DNA of 64,000 bases from contig CM119373.1 of assembly GCA_051294905.1 (NCBI GenBank), forward strand, positions 6,944,001 to 7,008,000. Direction: 5' to 3'. Origin of the DNA: Botryllus schlosseri. Taxonomy: Eukaryota. Below the pieces are notes generated by a model. It was given only the letters and a program-made list of their open reading frames with translations, did no database searches and had not been told where the DNA came from. Below are positions 38,723 through 49,237 of the stretch, piece by piece. The translations under genes were made by a program, and so were the position numbers. Position 1 is the first letter of the stretch; each line of letters begins with the position of its first letter.

Positions 38723-38954
38723 TATTGAAATTATTGTTACATTATAGAAAGTGACTATGGAACGGAAACTCCCGTTTTCCCATTGTTAGGTCACGCATGA
38801 CTGAATCTAGCGGATTCGGACAACCGAGCAATCGCAACGAACGTTGGAGGCGTGAGTTATTCCAGTTCCGAGGTAATTTCGGGCAGGTGTAAAGGGTACG
38901 GACGGTAATGAGATGGAGACAGCCAAGGGGTCGTGGTTTATATATGTCCTGTGA

Positions 38955-41699
38955 ATGGGATCAGTGTTTTTGTAACCAATACTTATCGACAGAGGACAGT
39001 TTTTGTTGCAACTCTGGAGTTTCCGATCGACATTATTATTGTACTTGATATTTTCGTATATTATTTTATTTAAAAATTCATATCACTATAACAGCCAGGG
39101 TAAGTCAAAGCTTTTATCTGATAGCAGAAAGTGTAATCTTGACTACAAAAGGATGTCAACAACGGATGCGATGTTGAGTGTGCCTGAGACAATTTTAGTT
39201 GAAATTAAGACTGATAGTTTGGATATAGATTATTCCGCTGAAGAATATCAGAAGTTCAGGGATTTATCATTGACAGCATCGGAACCCGATTCTCACAGTA
39301 TTGATTTGTCACTTTTATCACACTATGGAGCTACATTGATTACAGACTGGCAGGAAAGATTTAAAACAACTGGAAATTTGGAGGCCATTATGGAGTAGTA
39401 TTCTGATTTGATGGAGGGTAGCAGAATTTTCAAGTGTTTTTCTGAGCCGGTTCCCGAAATTGCAGATGCTGCATTACATTTGCTAGAAATAATTGATAGT
39501 ATTGTTGCATCGAGGCCTGTCGACCAAGTTGCACATGCCAGCATTTCAGCAAGAGAGGCAGATATCATCGAGTTTATTGGAGGTTTTGTTTTGCGGCGTG
39601 TGAAAACCCGTTTTCTCAGATCACCTCAACTTCATGACATTATATCGAACTTGGAATCAGACTCTCCACAGTTCACTTTGATACCACTGCTGGAGAAATT
39701 CAAACTCATTTATCCGTCTATGGAAGTACAATCTTTCTTTCAAAACATATTTGTAGAGGGGTAATTCCATGTCAGATCAACCAAAAAAATGGATTTCGTC
39801 ACCACATAGTGTCAGATTTTGCTGAAATTTGGCTCAAAACATCACGAAGTATAGCTCACTAAATCGCAATTTATTTGAAAGGAATTACTTCAGTAGTTTC
39901 AAAGTTATCGCATGATGAAAAACAGGCTTTTCATGCCCATTCAACCGTGAAATTGAAGGGCTGTTTTTAAGTATATTTGGAATTGTCTGTGAATGAGCTA
40001 CTTTGACCTTAAAGTGTTGTTCACTTGTTATGTTGTTTAAATTGATCTATTCTATCATTCAAGTGCGAAATTAGTGATTTTTGGTGCACGGCCCAGAATT
40101 TATTTCAAGTTAAAAGATGTTACCTCTGGAAATCACTCAAGCATGACAATATTTCAGGAGTCTCCCTCTCATTTCTGTCTACTTGAAAAAAGTTATGAAG
40201 GGTGGAAAATGAAAGCTGTTGTAACATAGATTCCTTACAACATAAGTTTTTATCTAATATTCACTTACAAAGTTTTGAAAAACAGGGTATATTTCAGGTC
40301 ATGAAAATGTAGTGATTTTCCTAAAAATGATGTTTGATATTCTAGTTGCTGTGTTACCTTGAGACAAACTCCAGCATGTTACTCATTTTCTGGAAATTCT
40401 TTGTTCTAACAGCTTTCATATGACACCATTTACAAAAATTTTGAAACAGACAGAAACGAGAGAGAGACCGCTGAAATATTGTTGTTACGGTTCAGTGGTT
40501 TCTGGGTTTAATGAGTTACATTTTGGGATGTCAGCCAAAAATCAGTAATTTTTGTCCTGCATGATAGAATAGATCAATTTATACACCATAACAAATTGAA
40601 CAACTCTCTGATTGTCAAAATAGCTCATTTACAGAAAATTACAAATCAGCCAGAAAAATTACTTGAATTTCGCGGTTGGATGAGCATAAAAAGCTTGTTC
40701 TTTATCATGCAATACCTTGAAAACTACTTATGTAATTCATTTAAAATAAATTGATATTTACTTAGATATACTTCATGGTGTTTTAAGCCAAATTTCAGCA
40801 AAATCTGAAACTCAAGAGATACCCAATCTCTGTTTTGATTAATCTCAAATTGAATTACCCCATGGATTCAGAAGTATTTATGTCAAGTTAAGTTAGAGGT
40901 ACTATCCGTCAAATATTAGTTAACAAAACATATCAGCCAGTTTCCTCTACAAACAAGCTTTCATATGACATGTTACTTTCCAATTTTCGTGTAGACAGAA
41001 TTACGCTAGATATAATTGAAGTTCATGTTACGCATGAACGATTTTGAAAAGTGTCAGTTTATGAGGTGGGTTTTAACCCCTGACCCCATTTGATTATGTG
41101 ACAATTTTCCCTTCAATAGCAAGAGTTTCTTCTATTCTATCATTAGACACCATAATCCACTCTCAAGTACTTGACTATGCTGTTTTATAAACGTTACTGT
41201 AACAGGTAATGTAAAAGTAATAGAACTTCATGGTTGGGTGAGCACAGAATGGCCATTTTTTAAAATGCGATAACTTTGTGATGGATGGACCAATTTTGAC
41301 AAAATTAAGTTTGCTGCAGTCAGAACTGGATACCAGATTTACCCCTCCATTTTCATTGCAATCTGACACCTAGTGGTGACGGGTGCGGTTGATTTGACAT
41401 GGACTTACCCAGAGGCTAGTAAGGAGTTTTCCAAGCCTGCTGCGGAAATCAATGTAGAGCACTTGAAAAAGTGTATTTCTTCATCTAGATTTTTTTACAA
41501 TTTTGTCGATTACCTTGCTGACTCCGGCCCGTTTCCCTCTGAAAGCGTGAAAGAGGTAGTATTTGTAATGACTCTGCTCTACATAAAGACACTGACATAT
41601 AGTTTCTCAAGGAAATTGATTGATAGGCTGAGAAAATTCAAATCTAGTACCACAGCAGGCAGCGGCTCTCGTAGTCTCAGAACTGATTTGAAAAAATAA
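38955..41699 (+). pseudogene. Second (accessory) gene of the 10-kb element, interrupted by MITEs
   Basis: ORF pieces 39003-39398, 39408-39764 (EADIIEFIGGFVLRRVK...LIYPSMEV), 40862-40910 and 41373-41699 (LYIKTLTYSFSRKLIDRLRK...SLRTDLKK). The frame continues across the 39758-40861 insertion (IFVE|WIQKYL). Confidence 0.55.
39758..40861. mobile_element. Old non-autonomous element with long diverged TIRs (Sola2-like ends)
   Basis: GGGGTAATTC / GAATTACCCC termini; about 300-bp arms at roughly 75-80% identity by eye; no TSD recognised. Confidence 0.7.
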
Positions 41700-44609
41700 A
41701 CCAATTCATTAACAGGTCATAGTTAAGTGACATAATTAGATACTTGATGCGTGAACTCTGACTAGGTGAGAGTAGAGTAGCAGAAATGCAATCTGTGTAT
41801 TTATTTGATGCAATTCCAATCAATTTTTCATGCGTTTTTGCAGGGGTTCCTCATTCAATTCCGTCCATGCATTTTTATCACCAAATGTTGTGTTGCCGCC
41901 TTTCAATTTCTTGATTCCTTTTCTTACAGTTAGGTGTTGGATGGCATAGGCAGCTTGATTGATGTCTGGATTGGAACAACGCGCCCCATGTTGTCGCTGT
42001 TTATTGGATATAAGAATTCTAAAAGATAGGAGAGAACGGAGCTTACAATATATTCTCACCACATTTCCGAAAAAGGCCTCCAATACATCCTGTGAGAATG
42101 AATGAAGTCCGACATAATTTGAATACTTTCCATCAAGCAAACGCCTACAAAGGCACGCAAAATTACGTGATGTGAAGCAAAGCCCTTCAAGGGTTGGCAT
42201 TGCTACCAGTTTCTTGCAGTCTCCTGAAAGACTATCCTGAACATACAATTATATAAGTGAACTTTCATGCAATCTGTTGCATCCCACTTACATGCCACTG
42301 CGCAAGGCTGTCAGCAAATGTCTCAAGCCAAGAGATGCGTTCATCATCCAGATTTTTGATTGGATTTTTTGAAGAGCAGTCTACAATTGAAAACCATCTA
42401 CAAAGATGAAATATCAGGTATACTACATATCATATGTCATAAGTTTATAGGACATACTTGGCGAAATTAAGTATGTAATCCGCCGTGCCCTCTGCTCTTG
42501 GTACCTTACTCAACACTTTACCAACCCGCTCATTTAAAACAGCACGAGCCAAACCAACATTCATCTGTTTGACAAGCAGAAATGATAATTTACTGACACT
42601 GATCGATAATGTCACAGTTACCTTGCTATATGGCGTCAGTTCAACGTGTACTTTTTTCAACAAGCTTTCACTCAGCATTGAATGAGATTCGCGCTTGTAC
42701 AGATCTGAAATATCCGTCCAGACAATCGGACGACCTTGAACATCTATCATTTCCTTTGAACCATTCTTTCGTGAATTATATAAGGAATTACGAGCAGTCT
42801 TAACCATGAAAAGCAACAATTAAACACTATGTGTAGAGTAAATTTTACCTAAATTACCTTCAGCAAATGAGGGGGGTCTGACAGCAAGGCAATCGGTCGA
42901 TGAACAGCTAGCGGATTATGTGCCATAAGATTGCTTCGCATAGTGATTTTGTAACCTTGACTAATGATGCGAAACATCTTTCTGTTGGTTGGATGTCCAT
43001 CACATATCAAAGCATGAACTTGTAGACCGGCCTTTTCACATGCTATGATGTTCTTCCAAACCAATGAGGCAAGTCGTCCTGCTGTCATAGACCGTGTGGC
43101 GTACCATGCTATTGGCACAGAAACCTTTCTGGTTACGGTCCTTCCGTAAAATACTTTTAAATAAAATATATATTTATATTGGCCCCCATGTTTTTATTAA
43201 TGCTATACAAGCCATAAATCCTTACCTAAAATGTTACTGGCTAGCTCATTCCTTTTATTTTCTTCCGTCACTGACATAGGATCAACGAGCCCCACCAGTT
43301 TGCCTTCTCGCAAGACACCTTCTCGCAAGACAAGATTCTCTTTAACTGTTCATTGAATATTTGTCATATATTATTAATATATCTACAATTCTTGGCCAAT
43401 TAATACTGTTACTAAGCTTTACTTTTCATCTCGTCCAAACATATAAAGCCGGTCATGTTTTCCCCCTCTTCTTTTCTGACTGCAATTTGCTCCAGTGCCA
43501 ATTTATTTATGCCTGGACTAGGTGGGATACAGTTTCTGTGAACAATAGAAGTATGCAATTCTCTATATAATATGATGATCTGCTTTTTTATCTACCTGTA
43601 GGAGCGAATGGTGCGGTTGCTCGGCAATTGGAGAACATTGCTGCTTCTAATGTGTGCATAGGCTGCTGGGGATCTCGAGTACAACTCAATGCACCATCTC
43701 AGAATGTCAGGATGATAGCGGCGACCATTACCTGACCTCTGGGAATTGATCATGTCATCAAGAAATAATTGATGCAAGAACTCATTCATGTTGCCTTTTT
43801 CAGTATCAACTATCGCCTATAAATTAACCTTATTAGTTGCATGTTGCTGCCAGTTATGTGTGTGGTCTGCAATAAATACCTGAACCGTCAAATGTACCTG
43901 CTCATCCACCTCTACCGTTTCGTCCAAGCTATTTTGGTTATTCGCCTTGATGTATGCTGAGCAACCATCACAAATCTCCAGCGAATCAACTAGAATGTGG
44001 GTAATCAAGGTCACAGAGCTCAGTTACACTGACCTGTCCAATGCAAATTTGTACCTAAAATACGGCATGTCGCGCAGCGATGAATCACAGACACTTTTAG
44101 TTCGTGACTACCCATTCTTTCGACTACAGGGTGAGATTTGGTGTCCTGAAATTCTGACCCGACTCCAGAACATACATTTAGTTTCTCCAATTGCTCTAAA
44201 TATGTCGTATTTCAACATCATTATCACAGTTACTTCAGTGAATTTTCGCAACCTACTGATGACATCATGTAGTTCTATGTAACACATATCCATCTCAAAA
44301 AATTGTTTCAAATCCACTGCCCAGCCAAAGCAGTGAAGTTGGTTGTTCCCTGATTGCAGGTCAATGCTTATCCTGAACAAATAATACTTCATAATTGCAG
44401 TCATTTTTCAATCTATTTCAAGCTACTTACACGGACACTTATTAATTTTTTCGCTACCTGACACACTATTACACCAATGACTAACAAATTCACCTCAATC
44501 TTGGTGCCAGACCAGAGTCTTCATCATCTTCATACCGTCCAATCAACCTGCCCTTTTTTTCGTAAAACACCCAATATTCTAAATGATCAAATGTTAGCCA
44601 TTCACTTGC

Positions 44610-47384
44610 GGGTCAGATCATGTCAGGTGATACAGGCCATATTTCCACCATCTTGGATTGTCATGAAAATAGGCATGCTTACAGAGCTGTGTTTTCTGAT
44701 TTCAGAAAACCAAATTTCATGAAAAAAGGTCATCTTGAACCGAAGATATGACCGTCCAAAAATTGCTATTTTTGTGATCGCTCAAGCGGAAAAAATATCA
44801 GAAATTTATACATGAAGTTTAATTTTGCTATATTTCGGGCAAATTAAGGTTGTTGAGAGTGACACTTACACACTTGTTCATTTATATCCTGCTTGATACT
44901 TTTTCGATTTCTTGGACACTTAGAGTTGCATAGTCTGACCTCTAACCTCGTGATTTTGTTCATGTCTTTGAAAATCACTCACGCGTGACTTCATTTTCAA
45001 TTGCAGATATCTCATGGTGACTAGGTGATATCATCAAGTGTAAGGTATCATTGGAAAGCTCTTTAAAAGGACTTTTAAAATGAATAATAAAATTAGTGAC
45101 TTCTTATCATCACATTGGAAAAAAATTGTGTAAAATAATGTTGGAAAAATTGTTGATTTCAAAATATTATTACAATTTTACTTTCACAACAGGTTGTACG
45201 GTATTAAATCTGAGGATGTGGATGGACTTATTTCGTTCAAACAGTGGGTGTCAGTTGACCGAGCTGATCTAATAACCCAAAACTTAACCATAACTGAATT
45301 TATTCAGTTGATATTAAAAAAGCTTACAGATTTAGCACCACATCATCACATTTCGCATTCACAGTCTTTATATTTGAAAAAACGAAAACAAGATATGGAT
45401 CAGCAAACAGCTCTTGTATTAATGGCTTTTGTGGAAAATTATTCTTTCCACATTCAAGATGAAGCGCAAGGGTATCATTGGACTCACCAATGCTGCACTG
45501 TGCACCCGGTAGTTTGCTACTACAAGTCTGCAAGCAACGATATTTTGCATTTAAATCTATGCTTTTTATCGGAAGAGTTGTTGCACGATGCAGTAATGGT
45601 GTATCTGATTCAGCAAAAAACAATTGAAGTTCTCAAAAGTACAATTCACAACTTGGACAATGTGGAATATTTTAGCGATGGTTGCGCTGCCCAGTACAAA
45701 AACAGAAAATCATTTTACAATTTGTGCAAGCACAAAGCTGACTTCAAGGTGGATGCTACGTGGTCCTTTTTTGCCACGAGCCATAGTAAATCGCCATGTG
45801 ATGGCATTGGTGGCACTGTAAAACGAGCTACAGCAATGGAAAGTCTGAGACGCCCACTGAATGGTCAGATTTTGAACGTTGAAGAAATGATGTCCTATTG
45901 CGTGAAAAATCTCCAAAAAATAAAAAATTTTAATTTGCTAAAAGACGAATTGGATGCTACGAAAGCTTTTTCGGAACATCGATTTCAGCTCGCCACCACA
46001 GTCAAAGGTACTCCATTCCATAATTTTAGGACTTTGTCATCAACCAAACTGGGAGCAAAACGTGTCAGCCAAGACAAACAGTATGTATTGGAAGTTAAAT
46101 TAGATGAAGACTCAAACCAAGAACATGTACTTCAAACTGAAATTGTCAAAAACAAATTTGTATGCTGCGTTTATGATGAAAACTGGTACATTGGCATGGT
46201 CACAGAAATTGACAAGCAAAACAACGATGCCTTAGTTGAATTCATGCACCCAAAAGGCCCATCACAGTTTTTTCAGTGGCCCCAAAATAAAGATTCTTGC
46301 TGGACACCGTTCCAGCACATTTTGTGCACAGTTGACGTTCCTTGTTTATTCAATAATCGGGGACAATACCAAATGACAAAGGAATCAGCACTGAAAGTCA
46401 TGCAAGTTTTGAAGAAATATCATCAAAGATAAATATTATCTGATATGAGCAAATAGTTATTATCTAATAGTATGAAAACTAAAGAACCCGCAGGACCTTG
46501 ATATTGATTGTCATTGTTCCTTTCATTGTTTAGTGCTGATTGTTACCCGAATGTATTGTGTAGAGTACATAAAACATCGCATCTTATCGTGTCAGTTGTG
46601 ATGTGTTTTGGAAGTATTGTGTGGTCACCTCAAACTGTGTAGCAAAATTTTCTCAAATTTTCAAAAATATCTCAAATTATTGTCAGCATAATTTATGTCA
46701 GCAATTATCTGTTTGAGTTATACTGACTACATTATGTATAAAGCACTTGGCACGGTACTGTATATAGAATTAAGGTGGAATGAGTTGCTTTTCAGAGTTT
46801 GCTCTTGTTAAAAAGGGGGAGGATTTTGAATAAATTTGCAAGTTAGCTTCATGGCGCTCTTATGGTATGTTACGATTCAAAAGTCACTAATGTTATTTTT
46901 GTTTTTAAAAGCTCTTGTCAAGAGCTTTCCAATGATACCTCACACTTGATGACATCACCTGGTCACCAAGAGATATTTGCAATCGAAAATGAAGTCACGC
47001 ATGAATGATTTTCAAATGCATGAACAAAAAAGCGAGGTCAAAGTTCAGGCTATGCAACCCCAGGTGTCAAAGAAGGCGAAAAAGTGTCAAGCAGGACATA
47101 AATGAACAAGTGTGAAAGTGTTACCTTCAACAACCCTAATTTGACCGAATTGTAGCAAATTCAAATAACATGTATAAATTTCTGACATTTTTTCCGCTTG
47201 AGTGATCACAAAAACAGCAATTTTTGGACGGTCATATCTTCGGTTCAAGATGACCTTTTTTGATGAAATTTGGTTTTCTGAAATCAGAAAACACGGCTCT
47301 GTAACCATATCAATTTTTATGACAATCTGAGATGGTGAAGGTACATTTTGAAATTTTTCTGGATCACCTGACATGATCTGACCC
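44610..47384 (+). mobile_element. Sola2-type DNA transposon, internally deleted
   Basis: GGGTCAGATCATGTCAGGTGAT termini, about 500-bp TIRs (44610-45105, 46875-47384), perfect 4-bp TSD TTGC. Confidence 0.9.
45194..46432 (+). pseudogene. Sola2-type transposase, N-terminally deleted
   Basis: ENYSFHIQDEAQGYHW, HPVVCYY, LLHD, FSDGCAAQYKN, FFATSHSKSPCDGIGGTVKR; the usual DFxEN aspartate reads A. Confidence 0.85.
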
Positions 47385-49237
47385 TTGCACATTATATGTA
47401 TATCCTAGGGACACCACCTGACTCTACTTGTATCTTCATTGCTGCCTTGTGAAGTTTTTCAAAGGTTCTGTAAACCTGTTTTGGAGGTAATTGTTTCCTC
47501 TTGCTAGGGGGGTTGCGATGTGGACTCCTGAACACACTAGTCAAATTTTTCGGGAGATTTTCAGTTGGCACCGCTCCGATCCTAAGCATTTTCCTGGACT
47601 TTTTGATTATAATGTCACTTTGACTGAAATGTTGCTCGCAGATTGCCATCCTACATGAAGGAAAACAACTACTGAACAATAACCCCTTCTGGTAACCATT
47701 CTATCAGACTCACATTTCTCTACAAAGCTTGTCTGCAATGATTTTCTTTGTCTCACCCCTAACTGAGTACACAAACTTGTGCAGCATTTCTCTGTGGTGT
47801 TTTTCTTCCTCACTGGCTGCAAATTCAGGGCGAAGCACAGTAAAAAGACCAATTCGATTTTTAGATGGCTTTCGAAAGTTGCACTCAGGAACACAACAAT
47901 TTGATGGAGCCATGTTTGCAACACCTAATCTTTGAAATACAAAATGATAATAATGTTACTTAGAAGAGCAAAGTCAAGACGATGTGATTTGAAAATTGAA
48001 TGATCAAATCAAGTAATATAACAGCATTAGCGTAAGGTGGACGAATTTAAAGTCTGATATCACTAGTCATCTGCCACTCTTCACAGGCCTGATTAGGATA
48101 TTGGTTTTTCCTCTGCATTTAGGTGTGTGAGATCAGAGTTGCCGTCGTGATATGACATCAATCCCAGGTGAATATTGCTTGCAAATCGTTTAAACGAGTC
48201 ATTTTGAACCTTCCAGAAGACCGAAATGTGGCATACATGGTGACCAACATTCTTTTCTTTGGGAGCGAGCGACTACGGGTCTTGTGATGGTGATATGGAG
48301 TACCGGTACAATACTTCGTATTGCAGTTCTTGCGGCCACACAGTGATTTCTATAACAAGTAAGACTTTACAGGCTAAACGAATGATACTATATCGCTGTT
48401 CCTGCGAAAAAATCCAGTAAATGGTACATGTAAATTGCCAATTGCACATTTCGGCCAGATTTTATCACACAATAACACAAACTGCCTCTCTTCATCGTTT
48501 AGAAACTCCAGATTTCCGATGAATACTGTTCTATGTCCATAAGTATTGGTTGCAAAACCACTGACCCTATTCACAAGGCATGAATAAACAACGACTCGAT
48601 GTGTTGCAGTTGGCTTTCTGCGCCTAAATGCCGCGGCTACCGCTCTCATCTAACCGAAATTGTCTCGAAACTGGAGAACATCACATCTCCTACATTCGTT
48701 ACGATTGTTCGGTTGTCCAAATCCGCTAGATTCAGTCATGCGTGACCTAACAATGGGAAAACGGGAGTTTCCGTTCCATAGTCACTTTCTATAGTTACAT
48801 TATCGCTCGTAATTCTGTATTTGTTATGGCAGTACGGTAAATCGATACAATGGTCCTTATTAAAGAAATTGATTTCGAACCTGACCATCGCACATCACTT
48901 CAGCACCTGTTCAAACCTGACCGTCAAATTGCCTGGAGCCAAATGGAAATTGTGACGTGATACAATTTCACTGAGGCGTGCGATTTGCCTGTGTCGACAC
49001 CATATACGGCCGGTAAGGTAGTGAGCCGTTGATGCATGACGCCCGTGGATACTGAGGAAGCGGCTTGCCTGGTAACCGCTATTGACAACATTTTGTGATT
49101 GTCCAAGTTCAAGTATGCTAGCGTATATTTCTCTTTGCTACGAATTCGGCAATATCTATATTGCGTAACTGTAACATTCTTTTATCGCTAGGAGATATAT
49201 AGCGTGTAATTATAGTAAGTTTGATTGCTGTTAAAAC

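What the first reader, a model, noticed from the sequence alone, without database searches (positions are those of the whole stretch)
38746..48790. P-type transposase in an element with non-P ends and a second convergent gene
The transposase is THAP9/P-like (RRYH, SDPPH, SQDxLExFF). P elements are known for CA termini, 7-8-bp TSDs and a single gene. Here the TIRs start AG, both flanks are AT as in the neighbouring ISL2EU elements, and a second multi-part gene faces the transposase. The flanks can also be read as a 12/13 duplication (attgttacattat / atagttacattat), or as AT inside a pre-existing 11-bp doublet. This is a candidate undescribed or poorly described P/Kolobok-related lineage.
Basis: partly seen in the sequence, partly recalled or inferred. 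Interest (0 to 1): 0.75.

Follow-up and report, generated by a model that had tools for sequence, protein, structure and literature searches.

The report
P transposon with split two-gene transposase
This is a P-type jumping gene with ordinary P-type ends (7-bp target duplication), but the tail domain of its transposase is made by a separate gene on the opposite strand, a layout I found in no paper searched.

Summary
In 34 of 35 distinct ends of the family the terminus starts TAT. Ten of 12 testable copies carry a perfect 7-bp target-site duplication (here GTTACAT), at a palindromic RTNNNAY target. The AT-flank, ISL2EU-like reading is therefore wrong, and the ends fit the P superfamily apart from starting TA, not CA.

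The canonical element is about 5.6 kb. This copy is 10 kb because two unrelated small transposons are nested in it.

The minus-strand gene is a P/THAP9-type transposase (THAP, HTH, RNase H with GTP-binding insertion, DDE intact). It stops about 70 residues after the catalytic glutamate and has no C-terminal domain.

The convergent second gene is real. In intact copies it is one 296-codon ORF under purifying selection (dN/dS 0.26-0.37). Its residues 129-277 are homologous to the Drosophila P transposase C-terminal domain. The same two-gene layout recurs in other families of this genome and in three foreign assemblies.

I infer a transposase split into two subunits. In this copy gene 2 is dead (premature stop plus a nested insertion).

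This scan reported the same layout twice before on other DNA of this genome (s1-249635, s1-249646).

The parts
38736..38742 (.). Left copy of the 7-bp target-site duplication, GTTACAT
   Evidence: Read directly from the sequence. The 7/7 match with 48794-48800 is.
38743..39030 (+). Left terminal inverted repeat, starting TATAGAAAGTGACTATGGAACGG. The first 184 nt are 83% complementary to the right end, and weaker pairing runs to about 39030.
   Evidence: TAT at 34 of 35 distinct ends.
39153..41699 (+). Gene 2, the stand-alone homolog of the P transposase C-terminal domain. It is broken in this copy. The coding pieces are 39153-39395, an in-frame stop at 39396-39398, 39399-39758, a nested insertion, then 41411-41696, with the normal stop at 41697-41699. 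In intact copies it is one 296-codon ORF (L031:4744-5631:-).
   Evidence: for structure. Homology. Selection.
39759..41410 (.). Nested insertion 1. A 1652-bp non-coding foldback/MITE-like element with termini GGGTAATTCCATGTCAG... and a 4-bp TSD, AGAG (39755-39758 and 41411-41414). It is not part of the P element.
   Evidence: Absent from copies L031-L036. Junction versus empty site. Internal inverted repeats.
41820..42248 (-). The two last transposase exons. They contain SQDVLEAFFG with the catalytic E (RNase H C-terminal part) and a 63-nt intron at about 42059-41997 that is confirmed by RNA contigs. The stop codon is at 41820-41822, about 57 codons after that intron. No C-terminal domain follows, and only about 120 bp separate the two stop codons.
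42398..42857 (-). Exons of the GTP-binding insertion domain, with three short GT..AG introns (about 42857-42799, 42621-42565 and 42457-42398) seen as joints in RNA contigs laid on copy L031.
   Evidence: PF21788 fragment; joints; tblastn to L054, whose GBD passes Pfam's cut-off; coordinate mapping.
42858..43193 (-). RNase H N-terminal exon, with the second catalytic D (ALICDGHPTN) and the SDPPH motif.
   Evidence: PF21787, 44.5 bits, E 2.4e-11, above the cut-off.
43415..43816 (-). Exons holding the P-type HTH (GNGRRYHPDILRW; PF12017, 24.4 bits) and the first catalytic D (FICLDEM).
44610..47384 (.). Nested insertion 2. A 2775-bp TIR element with 26-nt TIRs GGGTCAGATCATGTCAGGTGATACAG, internal 457-nt inverted arms, a 4-bp TSD TTGC (44606-44609 and 47385-47388), and a 412-432-aa ORF at 45134-46429 (+). 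It is not part of the P element.
   Evidence: (I1, I9), (no Pfam hit; Atlas look-alikes including DUF7869).
47395..47913 (-). THAP DNA-binding domain exons, with the start codon at 47913 (MAPSNCCVPECNF...) and the second part ...AICEQHFSQSD.
   Evidence: (PF05485, 19-22 bits, the domain being split by an intron).
48495..48793 (-). Right terminal inverted repeat, ending ...GTCACTTTCTATA.
48794..48800 (.). Right copy of the 7-bp target-site duplication, GTTACAT.

Best explanation
Shown: this is a cut-and-paste DNA transposon of the P superfamily, about 5.6 kb in canonical form. It has roughly 180-290-bp TIRs that start TAT(A/C/G)GAA(A/T)GTGAC, and it integrates with a 7-bp target duplication at a palindromic RTNNNAY site. 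It carries two convergent genes.

Gene 1 (minus strand, multi-exon with 57-63-nt introns) encodes THAP, HTH and a split RNase H with the GTP-binding insertion. The D, D and E residues are intact, but the protein ends where the Drosophila enzyme has the flexible linker to its C-terminal domain (CTD).

Gene 2 (plus strand, 296 aa, intronless) encodes an extra N-terminal helical domain followed by a homolog of that missing CTD, ending in a basic tail.

Inferred: the two products assemble into one transposase complex, with the gene 2 protein supplying in trans the DNA-contacting CTD. [quoted passage not shown]

The window copy is a dead member. Gene 2 has a premature stop and a nested MITE, and the transposase gene is interrupted by a 2.8-kb nested element. 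Sister copies 96-99% identical to it keep gene 2 as an open frame. They could also mobilise the family's many 1.3-1.6-kb MITEs.
For: Ends and TSD: 35 distinct ends, 34 starting TAT. Ten of 12 testable pairs have a perfect 7/7 TSD and one has 6/7. Flank position -6 is T in 31/35 and position -2 is A in 32/35. At one locus three copies of GTTCAAC bracket two adjacent P-type MITEs (L023/L024).

P identity: PF21787 44.5 bits and PF12017 24.4 bits are above their cut-offs. PF21788, PF21789 and THAP give exon-fragment hits. tblastn links the exons to the L054 transposase, whose RNase H N-terminal part (87.5 bits) and GBD (66.6 bits) pass the cut-offs.

No CTD in gene 1: the stop comes 57 codons after the last confirmed intron, and nothing CTD-like lies on that strand downstream. 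hhalign of the gene 2 profile against the 847-aa L054 transposase finds nothing.

Gene 2 is a real gene: dN/dS is 0.26-0.37 between subfamilies. Intact ~300-aa ORFs occur in lineages 85, 46, 35 and 25% identical to relative P0002. The big search found 225 clusters in public data, and nearly all of the 150 listed are stand-alone proteins of about 80-450 aa.

The layout recurs: L040 in this genome, L052 and L053 (ENA assemblies), L054 (NCBI GCA_046766195.1) and the P0002 contig.

Transcription: four GT..AG introns appear as joints in contigs of run X2, and contigs of X1 and X2 cover gene 2.
Against: No experiment or complex model shows that the two proteins interact or that gene 2 is needed.

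RNA support for gene 2 is thin. Depth is about 1 in raw reads, the strand is not resolved, and the contig runs are only guessed to be RNA.

Repbase and Dfam could not be consulted, so the layout may already be catalogued there.
Confidence: 0.72

Rival explanations
1. Gene 2 is a regulator, not a subunit. A free CTD-like protein would bind the transposase or the transposon ends and damp or time transposition, much as truncated P products (66-kDa, KP) repress the Drosophila element.
For: Gene 2 carries an extra N-terminal domain, and relatives add a C2H2 finger, which would suit a DNA-binding regulator. The convergent, apparently overlapping transcripts would also suit regulation. dN/dS on gene 2 is somewhat higher than on the catalytic core.
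Against: Gene 1 has no CTD of its own. In the Drosophila enzyme that domain makes many transposon and target DNA contacts (PMC7776569). A pure inhibitor would not explain how the family stayed mobile (copies 96-99% alike with perfect TSDs), nor why the pairing persists across distant lineages.
Confidence: 0.18
2. Gene 2 is a non-functional relic: an inverted partial duplication of a once-fused transposase 3' end, or a passenger ORF.
For: It lies on the opposite strand directly after the transposase stop, as an inversion of a 3' segment would leave it.
Against: It has its own ATG and an N-terminal domain of about 125 residues. dN/dS is 0.26-0.37, with 41-47 non-synonymous against 33-40 synonymous changes where neutrality predicts about three times more non-synonymous. 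Intact ORFs persist in lineages down to 25% identity and in other organisms.
Confidence: 0.05
3. One reading: the ends are non-P (AG termini, AT target duplication as in ISL2EU, or insertion into an 11-bp doublet), so this is a hybrid or a new P/Kolobok-related superfamily.
For: In this single copy both flanks do read AT next to AGAAAG. The termini are not CA.
Against: TAT is part of the TIR in 34 of 35 ends, and a 7-bp duplication lies just outside it in 11 of 12 pairs. There is no TTAA (Kolobok) or 2-bp (ISL2EU) signature.
Confidence: 0.02

Closest known systems
Drosophila P element / vertebrate THAP9 transposases (P superfamily)
   Same: [quoted passage not shown] TIR element with MITE derivatives. 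Multi-exon transposase gene. A CTD fold and motifs (EYIAGYV, GGL..PS) are present in the system.
   Different: The CTD is encoded by a separate convergent gene that has its own N-terminal domain. The TSD is 7 bp, not the 8 bp of D. melanogaster P. The termini are TATAG..., not CATG.... The TIRs are long (about 180-290 bp), not 31 bp.
Galileo and 1360/Hoppel (P superfamily, Drosophila)
   Same: 7-bp target-site duplication (PMC3698922). Galileo also has long TIRs (my own knowledge).
   Different: Those elements have one intronless transposase gene. No second gene is described for them (PMC3698922).
Two-gene cut-and-paste transposons: ProtoRAG/RAG-like (convergent RAG1L and RAG2L), PIF/Harbinger (transposase plus Myb-like protein), MuDR (mudrA/mudrB)
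   Same: A catalytic transposase plus a second element-encoded protein. The convergent orientation matches RAG-like transposons (PMC7204232 abstract).
   Different: In those systems the partner is an unrelated protein. Here the partner is a domain that is part of the transposase polypeptide in the classical members of the same superfamily.
Kolobok and ISL2EU
   Same: THAP-containing eukaryotic DNA transposons. ISL2EU elements sit next door in this window.
   Different: Neither a TTAA nor a 2-bp TSD is seen here. The catalytic domain matches the P-specific Pfam models, including the GBD insertion.

Membership tests
P superfamily of DNA transposons | Transposase with a P-type RNase H catalytic domain (N-terminal part, DDE residues) | tested here: met
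   PF21787 at 44.5 bits against a cut-off of 24.6. The motifs FICLDEM, ALICDGHP and SQDVLEAFF are present.
P superfamily of DNA transposons | GTP-binding insertion domain splitting the RNase H fold | tested here: met
   The exon fragment hits PF21788 at 18 bits, below the cut-off because three introns split the domain. The same exons align by tblastn to residues 575-724 of the L054 transposase, whose GBD scores 66.6 bits.
P superfamily of DNA transposons | N-terminal THAP zinc-finger DNA-binding domain and P-type HTH | tested here: met
   THAP PF05485 at 19-22 bits on the second exon alone (cut-off 23.9), with the CCVPEC...CEQHF pattern. HTH PF12017 at 24.4 bits, above its cut-off of 23.
P superfamily of DNA transposons | 7-8-bp target-site duplication flanking the TIRs | tested here: met
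   7 bp: perfect in 10 of 12 pairs and 6/7 in one. The eighth position matches in only 4 of the 10 perfect pairs.
P superfamily of DNA transposons | Single gene encoding the whole transposase, including the C-terminal domain | tested here: not met
   Gene 1 stops before a CTD. The CTD homolog is gene 2, on the opposite strand. A fused 813-aa P-type ORF does exist elsewhere in this genome, at C6:29540481-29542280.
   The termini read TAT(A/C/G)GAA in 34 of 35 ends. Whether CA is truly defining for the whole superfamily was not checked against Repbase.
Kolobok | TTAA target-site duplication | tested here: not met
   The TSDs are 7-bp RTNNNAY sequences.
ISL2EU (PHIS) | 2-bp (AT) target-site duplication and a PIF/IS5-like DDE transposase | tested here: not met
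   The apparent AT is inside the TIR. The transposase matches P-specific Pfam families.
P transposase C-terminal domain (Pfam PF12596 / PF22824), for gene 2 | Sequence and fold match to the CTD of a bona fide P transposase | tested here: met

The most novel reading that the evidence does not exclude
A whole clade of P-superfamily transposons, present in several families of this marine animal and in other animal assemblies, works with a two-subunit transposase. The DNA-contacting C-terminal domain has been detached into a convergent gene and has gained its own N-terminal module (a helical domain, or a C2H2 finger in relatives). That module may add targeting or dosage control. The overlapping convergent transcripts may feed antisense or small-RNA regulation.
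Probability: 0.55. Interest if true: 0.72.

Novelty: new variant of a known kind. Interest (0 to 1): 0.62.

Why it matters
P element transposase is a textbook enzyme, and the role of its C-terminal domain is known mainly from one cryo-EM structure. A natural system in which that domain is a separate protein makes its function directly testable, by supplying or withholding it in trans. It also gives a rare example of a transposase being split into subunits, as opposed to recruiting an unrelated partner as RAG1/RAG2 or Harbinger do.

Two practical points follow. Annotators should expect about 300-aa 'orphan' ORFs next to P-like transposases. The corrected ends and the 7-bp RTNNNAY target allow clean annotation of this family and its MITEs.

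Tried and rejected
- Pfam on whole gene 2 gave nothing at E<=1. A 5-sequence profile against PDB gave only chance hits. The ESM Atlas feature search gave no usable hit. Homology appeared only with the 72-sequence profile and the fold comparison.
- phmmer of single transposase exons against PDB gave nothing.
- The word-index protein search found only two relatives of gene 2, so the exhaustive search was used.
- PF12596 and PF22824 searched over the genome did not detect gene 2 loci.
- TIRs and TSDs could not be defined in the foreign loci L052 and L054, probably because the contigs do not hold both ends.
- A genome-wide tally of gene 2 against transposase neighbourhoods failed.
- Run X21 (organism B) laid no reads.
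- Literature searches for a two-gene P element found none.
- I considered and rejected a DNA-inversion switch or trans-splicing that would fuse the CTD to gene 1, because gene 2 keeps its own ATG and N-terminal domain in all lineages.
- Exons were searched one by one by reference, and frame continuity across the confirmed introns was checked by arithmetic only.
Full report
**Observation**

The window is G000:C3:6944001-7008000 of a 495-Mb eukaryotic genome. The reported inverted repeats are real: arms 38743-38926 and 48610-48793 are 184 nt long and 83% complementary, with weaker pairing to about 39030 and 48495.

These frames hit the P-specific Pfam families:
- Tnp_P_element HTH, PF12017: 24.4 bits.
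- TNP-like RNase H N-terminal part, PF21787: 44.5 bits, E 2.4e-11.
- Fragments of the GTP-binding insertion domain (PF21788), the RNase H C-terminal part (PF21789) and THAP.

**True ends and target duplication**

A search of the whole genome with the left end found at least 40 scored matches of 153 candidates. They comprise full-length copies, an approximately 80%-identical subfamily, and many elements of 1.3-1.6 kb that share only the terminal ~80 bp.

- Among 35 distinct ends, 34 start TAT and the fourth base varies between A, C and G.
- Just outside that TAT, 10 of 12 testable end pairs have a perfect 7/7 direct repeat, and one has 6/7 beside a 13-bp duplicated terminus.
- The eighth base matches in only 4 of the 10 perfect pairs, so the duplication is 7 bp, not 8.
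- The target is palindromic, R-T-N-N-N-A-Y: T at position -6 in 31/35 ends and A at position -2 in 32/35.
- At one locus two P-type MITEs sit side by side, separated and flanked by three copies of GTTCAAC (L023/L024). That is what two successive 7-bp-duplicating insertions into the same site would give.

For the window copy, the element therefore spans 38743-48793 and the TSD is GTTACAT at 38736-38742 and 48794-48800.

A 7-bp TSD is the value reported for Galileo and 1360 in the P superfamily, and D. melanogaster P makes 8 bp (PMC3698922). Neither a TTAA (Kolobok) nor a 2-bp (ISL2EU) signature is present.

**Canonical structure**

Comparison with eight other copies shows a canonical element of about 5.6 kb.

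The window copy holds two foreign insertions, each confirmed against the uninterrupted sequence of copy L031:
- 39759-41410: 1652 bp, non-coding, 4-bp TSD AGAG.
- 44610-47384: 2775 bp, 26-nt TIRs, 4-bp TSD TTGC, with an ORF of 412-432 aa.

Copy L031 itself has a private 130-bp insert.

**Gene 1**

RNA-derived contigs of one public run, laid on copy L031, show four joints with GT..AG ends, of 59, 57, 60 and 63 nt, on the transposase strand.

- Their lengths keep the observed reading frames continuous. I checked this by arithmetic only.
- Exons were searched apart.
- A further short intron is needed near L031 4166-4192, where the coding frame changes. Others probably lie upstream. None of these was seen in the reads.
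- The three catalytic motifs are intact in the window copy.
- The last exon ends 57 codons after the final confirmed intron, roughly 70 residues after the catalytic E.
- Only about 120 bp separate this stop from the stop of gene 2, and nothing on that strand further on resembles a C-terminal domain.

**Gene 2**

In intact copies gene 2 is a single ORF of 296 codons (L031:4744-5631:-). In the window it is broken by an in-frame stop at 39396-39398 and by nested insertion 1.

It is a real gene:
- Between the two subfamilies dN/dS is 0.26-0.37, with 41-47 non-synonymous and 33-40 synonymous differences over about 295 codons. Most transposase exons give 0-0.2 and the second THAP exon 0.35-0.39.
- The genome holds more than 130 matches in lineages 85, 46, 35 and 25% identical to relative P0002, many with open frames of about 300-365 codons.

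The word-index search found only two relatives. I therefore used the exhaustive profile search. It found 225 clusters at E<=0.001. Nearly all of the 150 listed are stand-alone proteins of about 80-450 aa with the match at their C-terminal end, and some carry an N-terminal C2H2 finger.

**What gene 2 is**

- A profile of 72 family members searched against all PDB sequences gave one significant hit. It is chain B of 6P5A/6PE2, the C-terminal piece of Drosophila P element transposase, at E 3.1e-6, aligning the EYIAGYV and GGL..PS motifs.
- An AlphaFold2 model built from that alignment has mean pLDDT 84.
- Foldseek's top PDB hit is the same chain, though it is weak alone (E 0.76).
- Pfam's Tnp_P_element_C gives borderline hits in several members.
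- A relative, P0158, carries a precomputed THAP9_C (PF22824) hit.

Together these establish that the C-terminal half of the gene 2 protein is homologous to the P transposase CTD. The N-terminal ~125 residues form a confident helical domain for which I did not establish a relative.

**The layout recurs**

Gene 2 followed by a convergent P-type transposase is seen in:
- A 46%-identical family of this genome (L040).
- Two ENA assemblies (L052 and L053).
- An NCBI assembly (L054, GCA_046766195.1). There the transposase is a single 847-aa ORF with strong RNase H N-terminal and GBD hits. Only about 155 residues follow the GBD, and the gene 2 profile finds no match in the protein.
- The contig of P0002.

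By contrast, one P-type ORF of 813 codons elsewhere in this genome has both the RNase H N-terminal part and THAP9_C in one frame. The classical fused form therefore coexists with the split form.

**Mechanism**

In the Drosophila strand-transfer complex the CTD has these properties (PMC7776569):
- It is joined to the RNase H domain by a flexible, disordered linker.
- It contacts transposon and target DNA.
- It ends in a basic tail aimed at the target.

A domain with these properties could plausibly be delivered as a separate polypeptide. Gene 2 also ends in a basic tail. I therefore infer a two-subunit transposase.

What is shown: the homology, the absence of a CTD in gene 1, selection on gene 2, and recurrence of the pairing. 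What is inferred: the physical interaction and the requirement for gene 2. The main rival is that gene 2 is a regulator.

**Activity**

Sister copies are 96-99% identical to the window copy, most have perfect TSDs, and gene 2 is an open frame in at least four of them. MITE derivatives are numerous.

Contigs of runs X1 and X2 cover both genes. Raw RNA reads are sparse and do not resolve the strand. A joint at L031 2852|4022 with CT..AC ends, seen in raw reads and in two contig sets, looks like an intron on the gene 2 strand. That suggests overlapping convergent transcripts, but contigs cannot prove it.

**Novelty and limits**

My searches of the held literature found no description of a P element with a detached CTD gene. 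Repbase and Dfam could not be checked.

This scan had already reported the same layout on two other pieces of this genome (s1-249635 and s1-249646). I reached the reading independently before seeing those notes, and they do not count as support.

I class the element as a new variant of a known kind. The window copy itself is a dead, insertion-riddled member.

Noticed in passing
window 44610-47384: A nested 2775-bp TIR element. It has 26-nt TIRs GGGTCAGATCATGTCAGGTGATACAG, 457-nt internal inverted arms and a 4-bp TSD, TTGC. It carries an ORF of 412-432 aa (45134-46429, +) with no Pfam hit. Atlas look-alikes are eukaryotic hypothetical proteins, some with DUF7869 (PF25273). The superfamily is undetermined.
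   Followed up: partly
window 39759-41410: A nested 1652-bp non-coding foldback-like element with termini GGGTAATTCCATGTCAGATCAACC and a 4-bp TSD, AGAG. It shares the GGGT...CATGTCAG terminal pattern with the 2775-bp element, so it is probably a MITE of the same unknown family.
   Followed up: partly
L023/L024 (G000:C6:25385064-25389681): Two different P-type MITEs lie side by side, bracketed and separated by three copies of GTTCAAC. The second family has termini TATAGAAATTAAACATGGAACGGCAACG, which are related to this family's ends.
   Followed up: partly
L032 5921-5933 (G000:C2 copy, right end): The last 13 bp of the element (GTCACTTTCTATA) are duplicated in tandem at the right end. The TSD then matches 6/7 (GTTCAAG / GTTTAAG).
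   Followed up: no
L031 2852|4022 (window about 43603|42418): A joint skipping 1169 nt with CT..AC ends (GT..AG on the gene 2 strand) appears in raw RNA reads (2) and in contigs of two runs. It may be an intron in a long gene 2 transcript running antisense through the transposase exons.
   Followed up: no
G000:C6:29540481-29542280 (minus strand): An 813-codon open frame carries both TNP-like RNase H N-terminal part and THAP9_C. It is a classical fused P-type transposase in the same genome. Many other intronless P-type ORFs of about 790-850 codons are also present.
   Followed up: no
L031 763-892: This 130-bp stretch is present in copy L031 and absent from the window copy. Its read depth is very high, so it is probably a small repeat inserted in that copy.
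   Followed up: no
G000:C9:13103552-13103698, C2:28265250-28265396 and similar places: In the 35% lineage, the first ~50 codons of gene 2 recur on the opposite strand 1-5 kb away, or upstream of the THAP exon. The likely reason is that those families' long TIRs include the start of gene 2.
   Followed up: no
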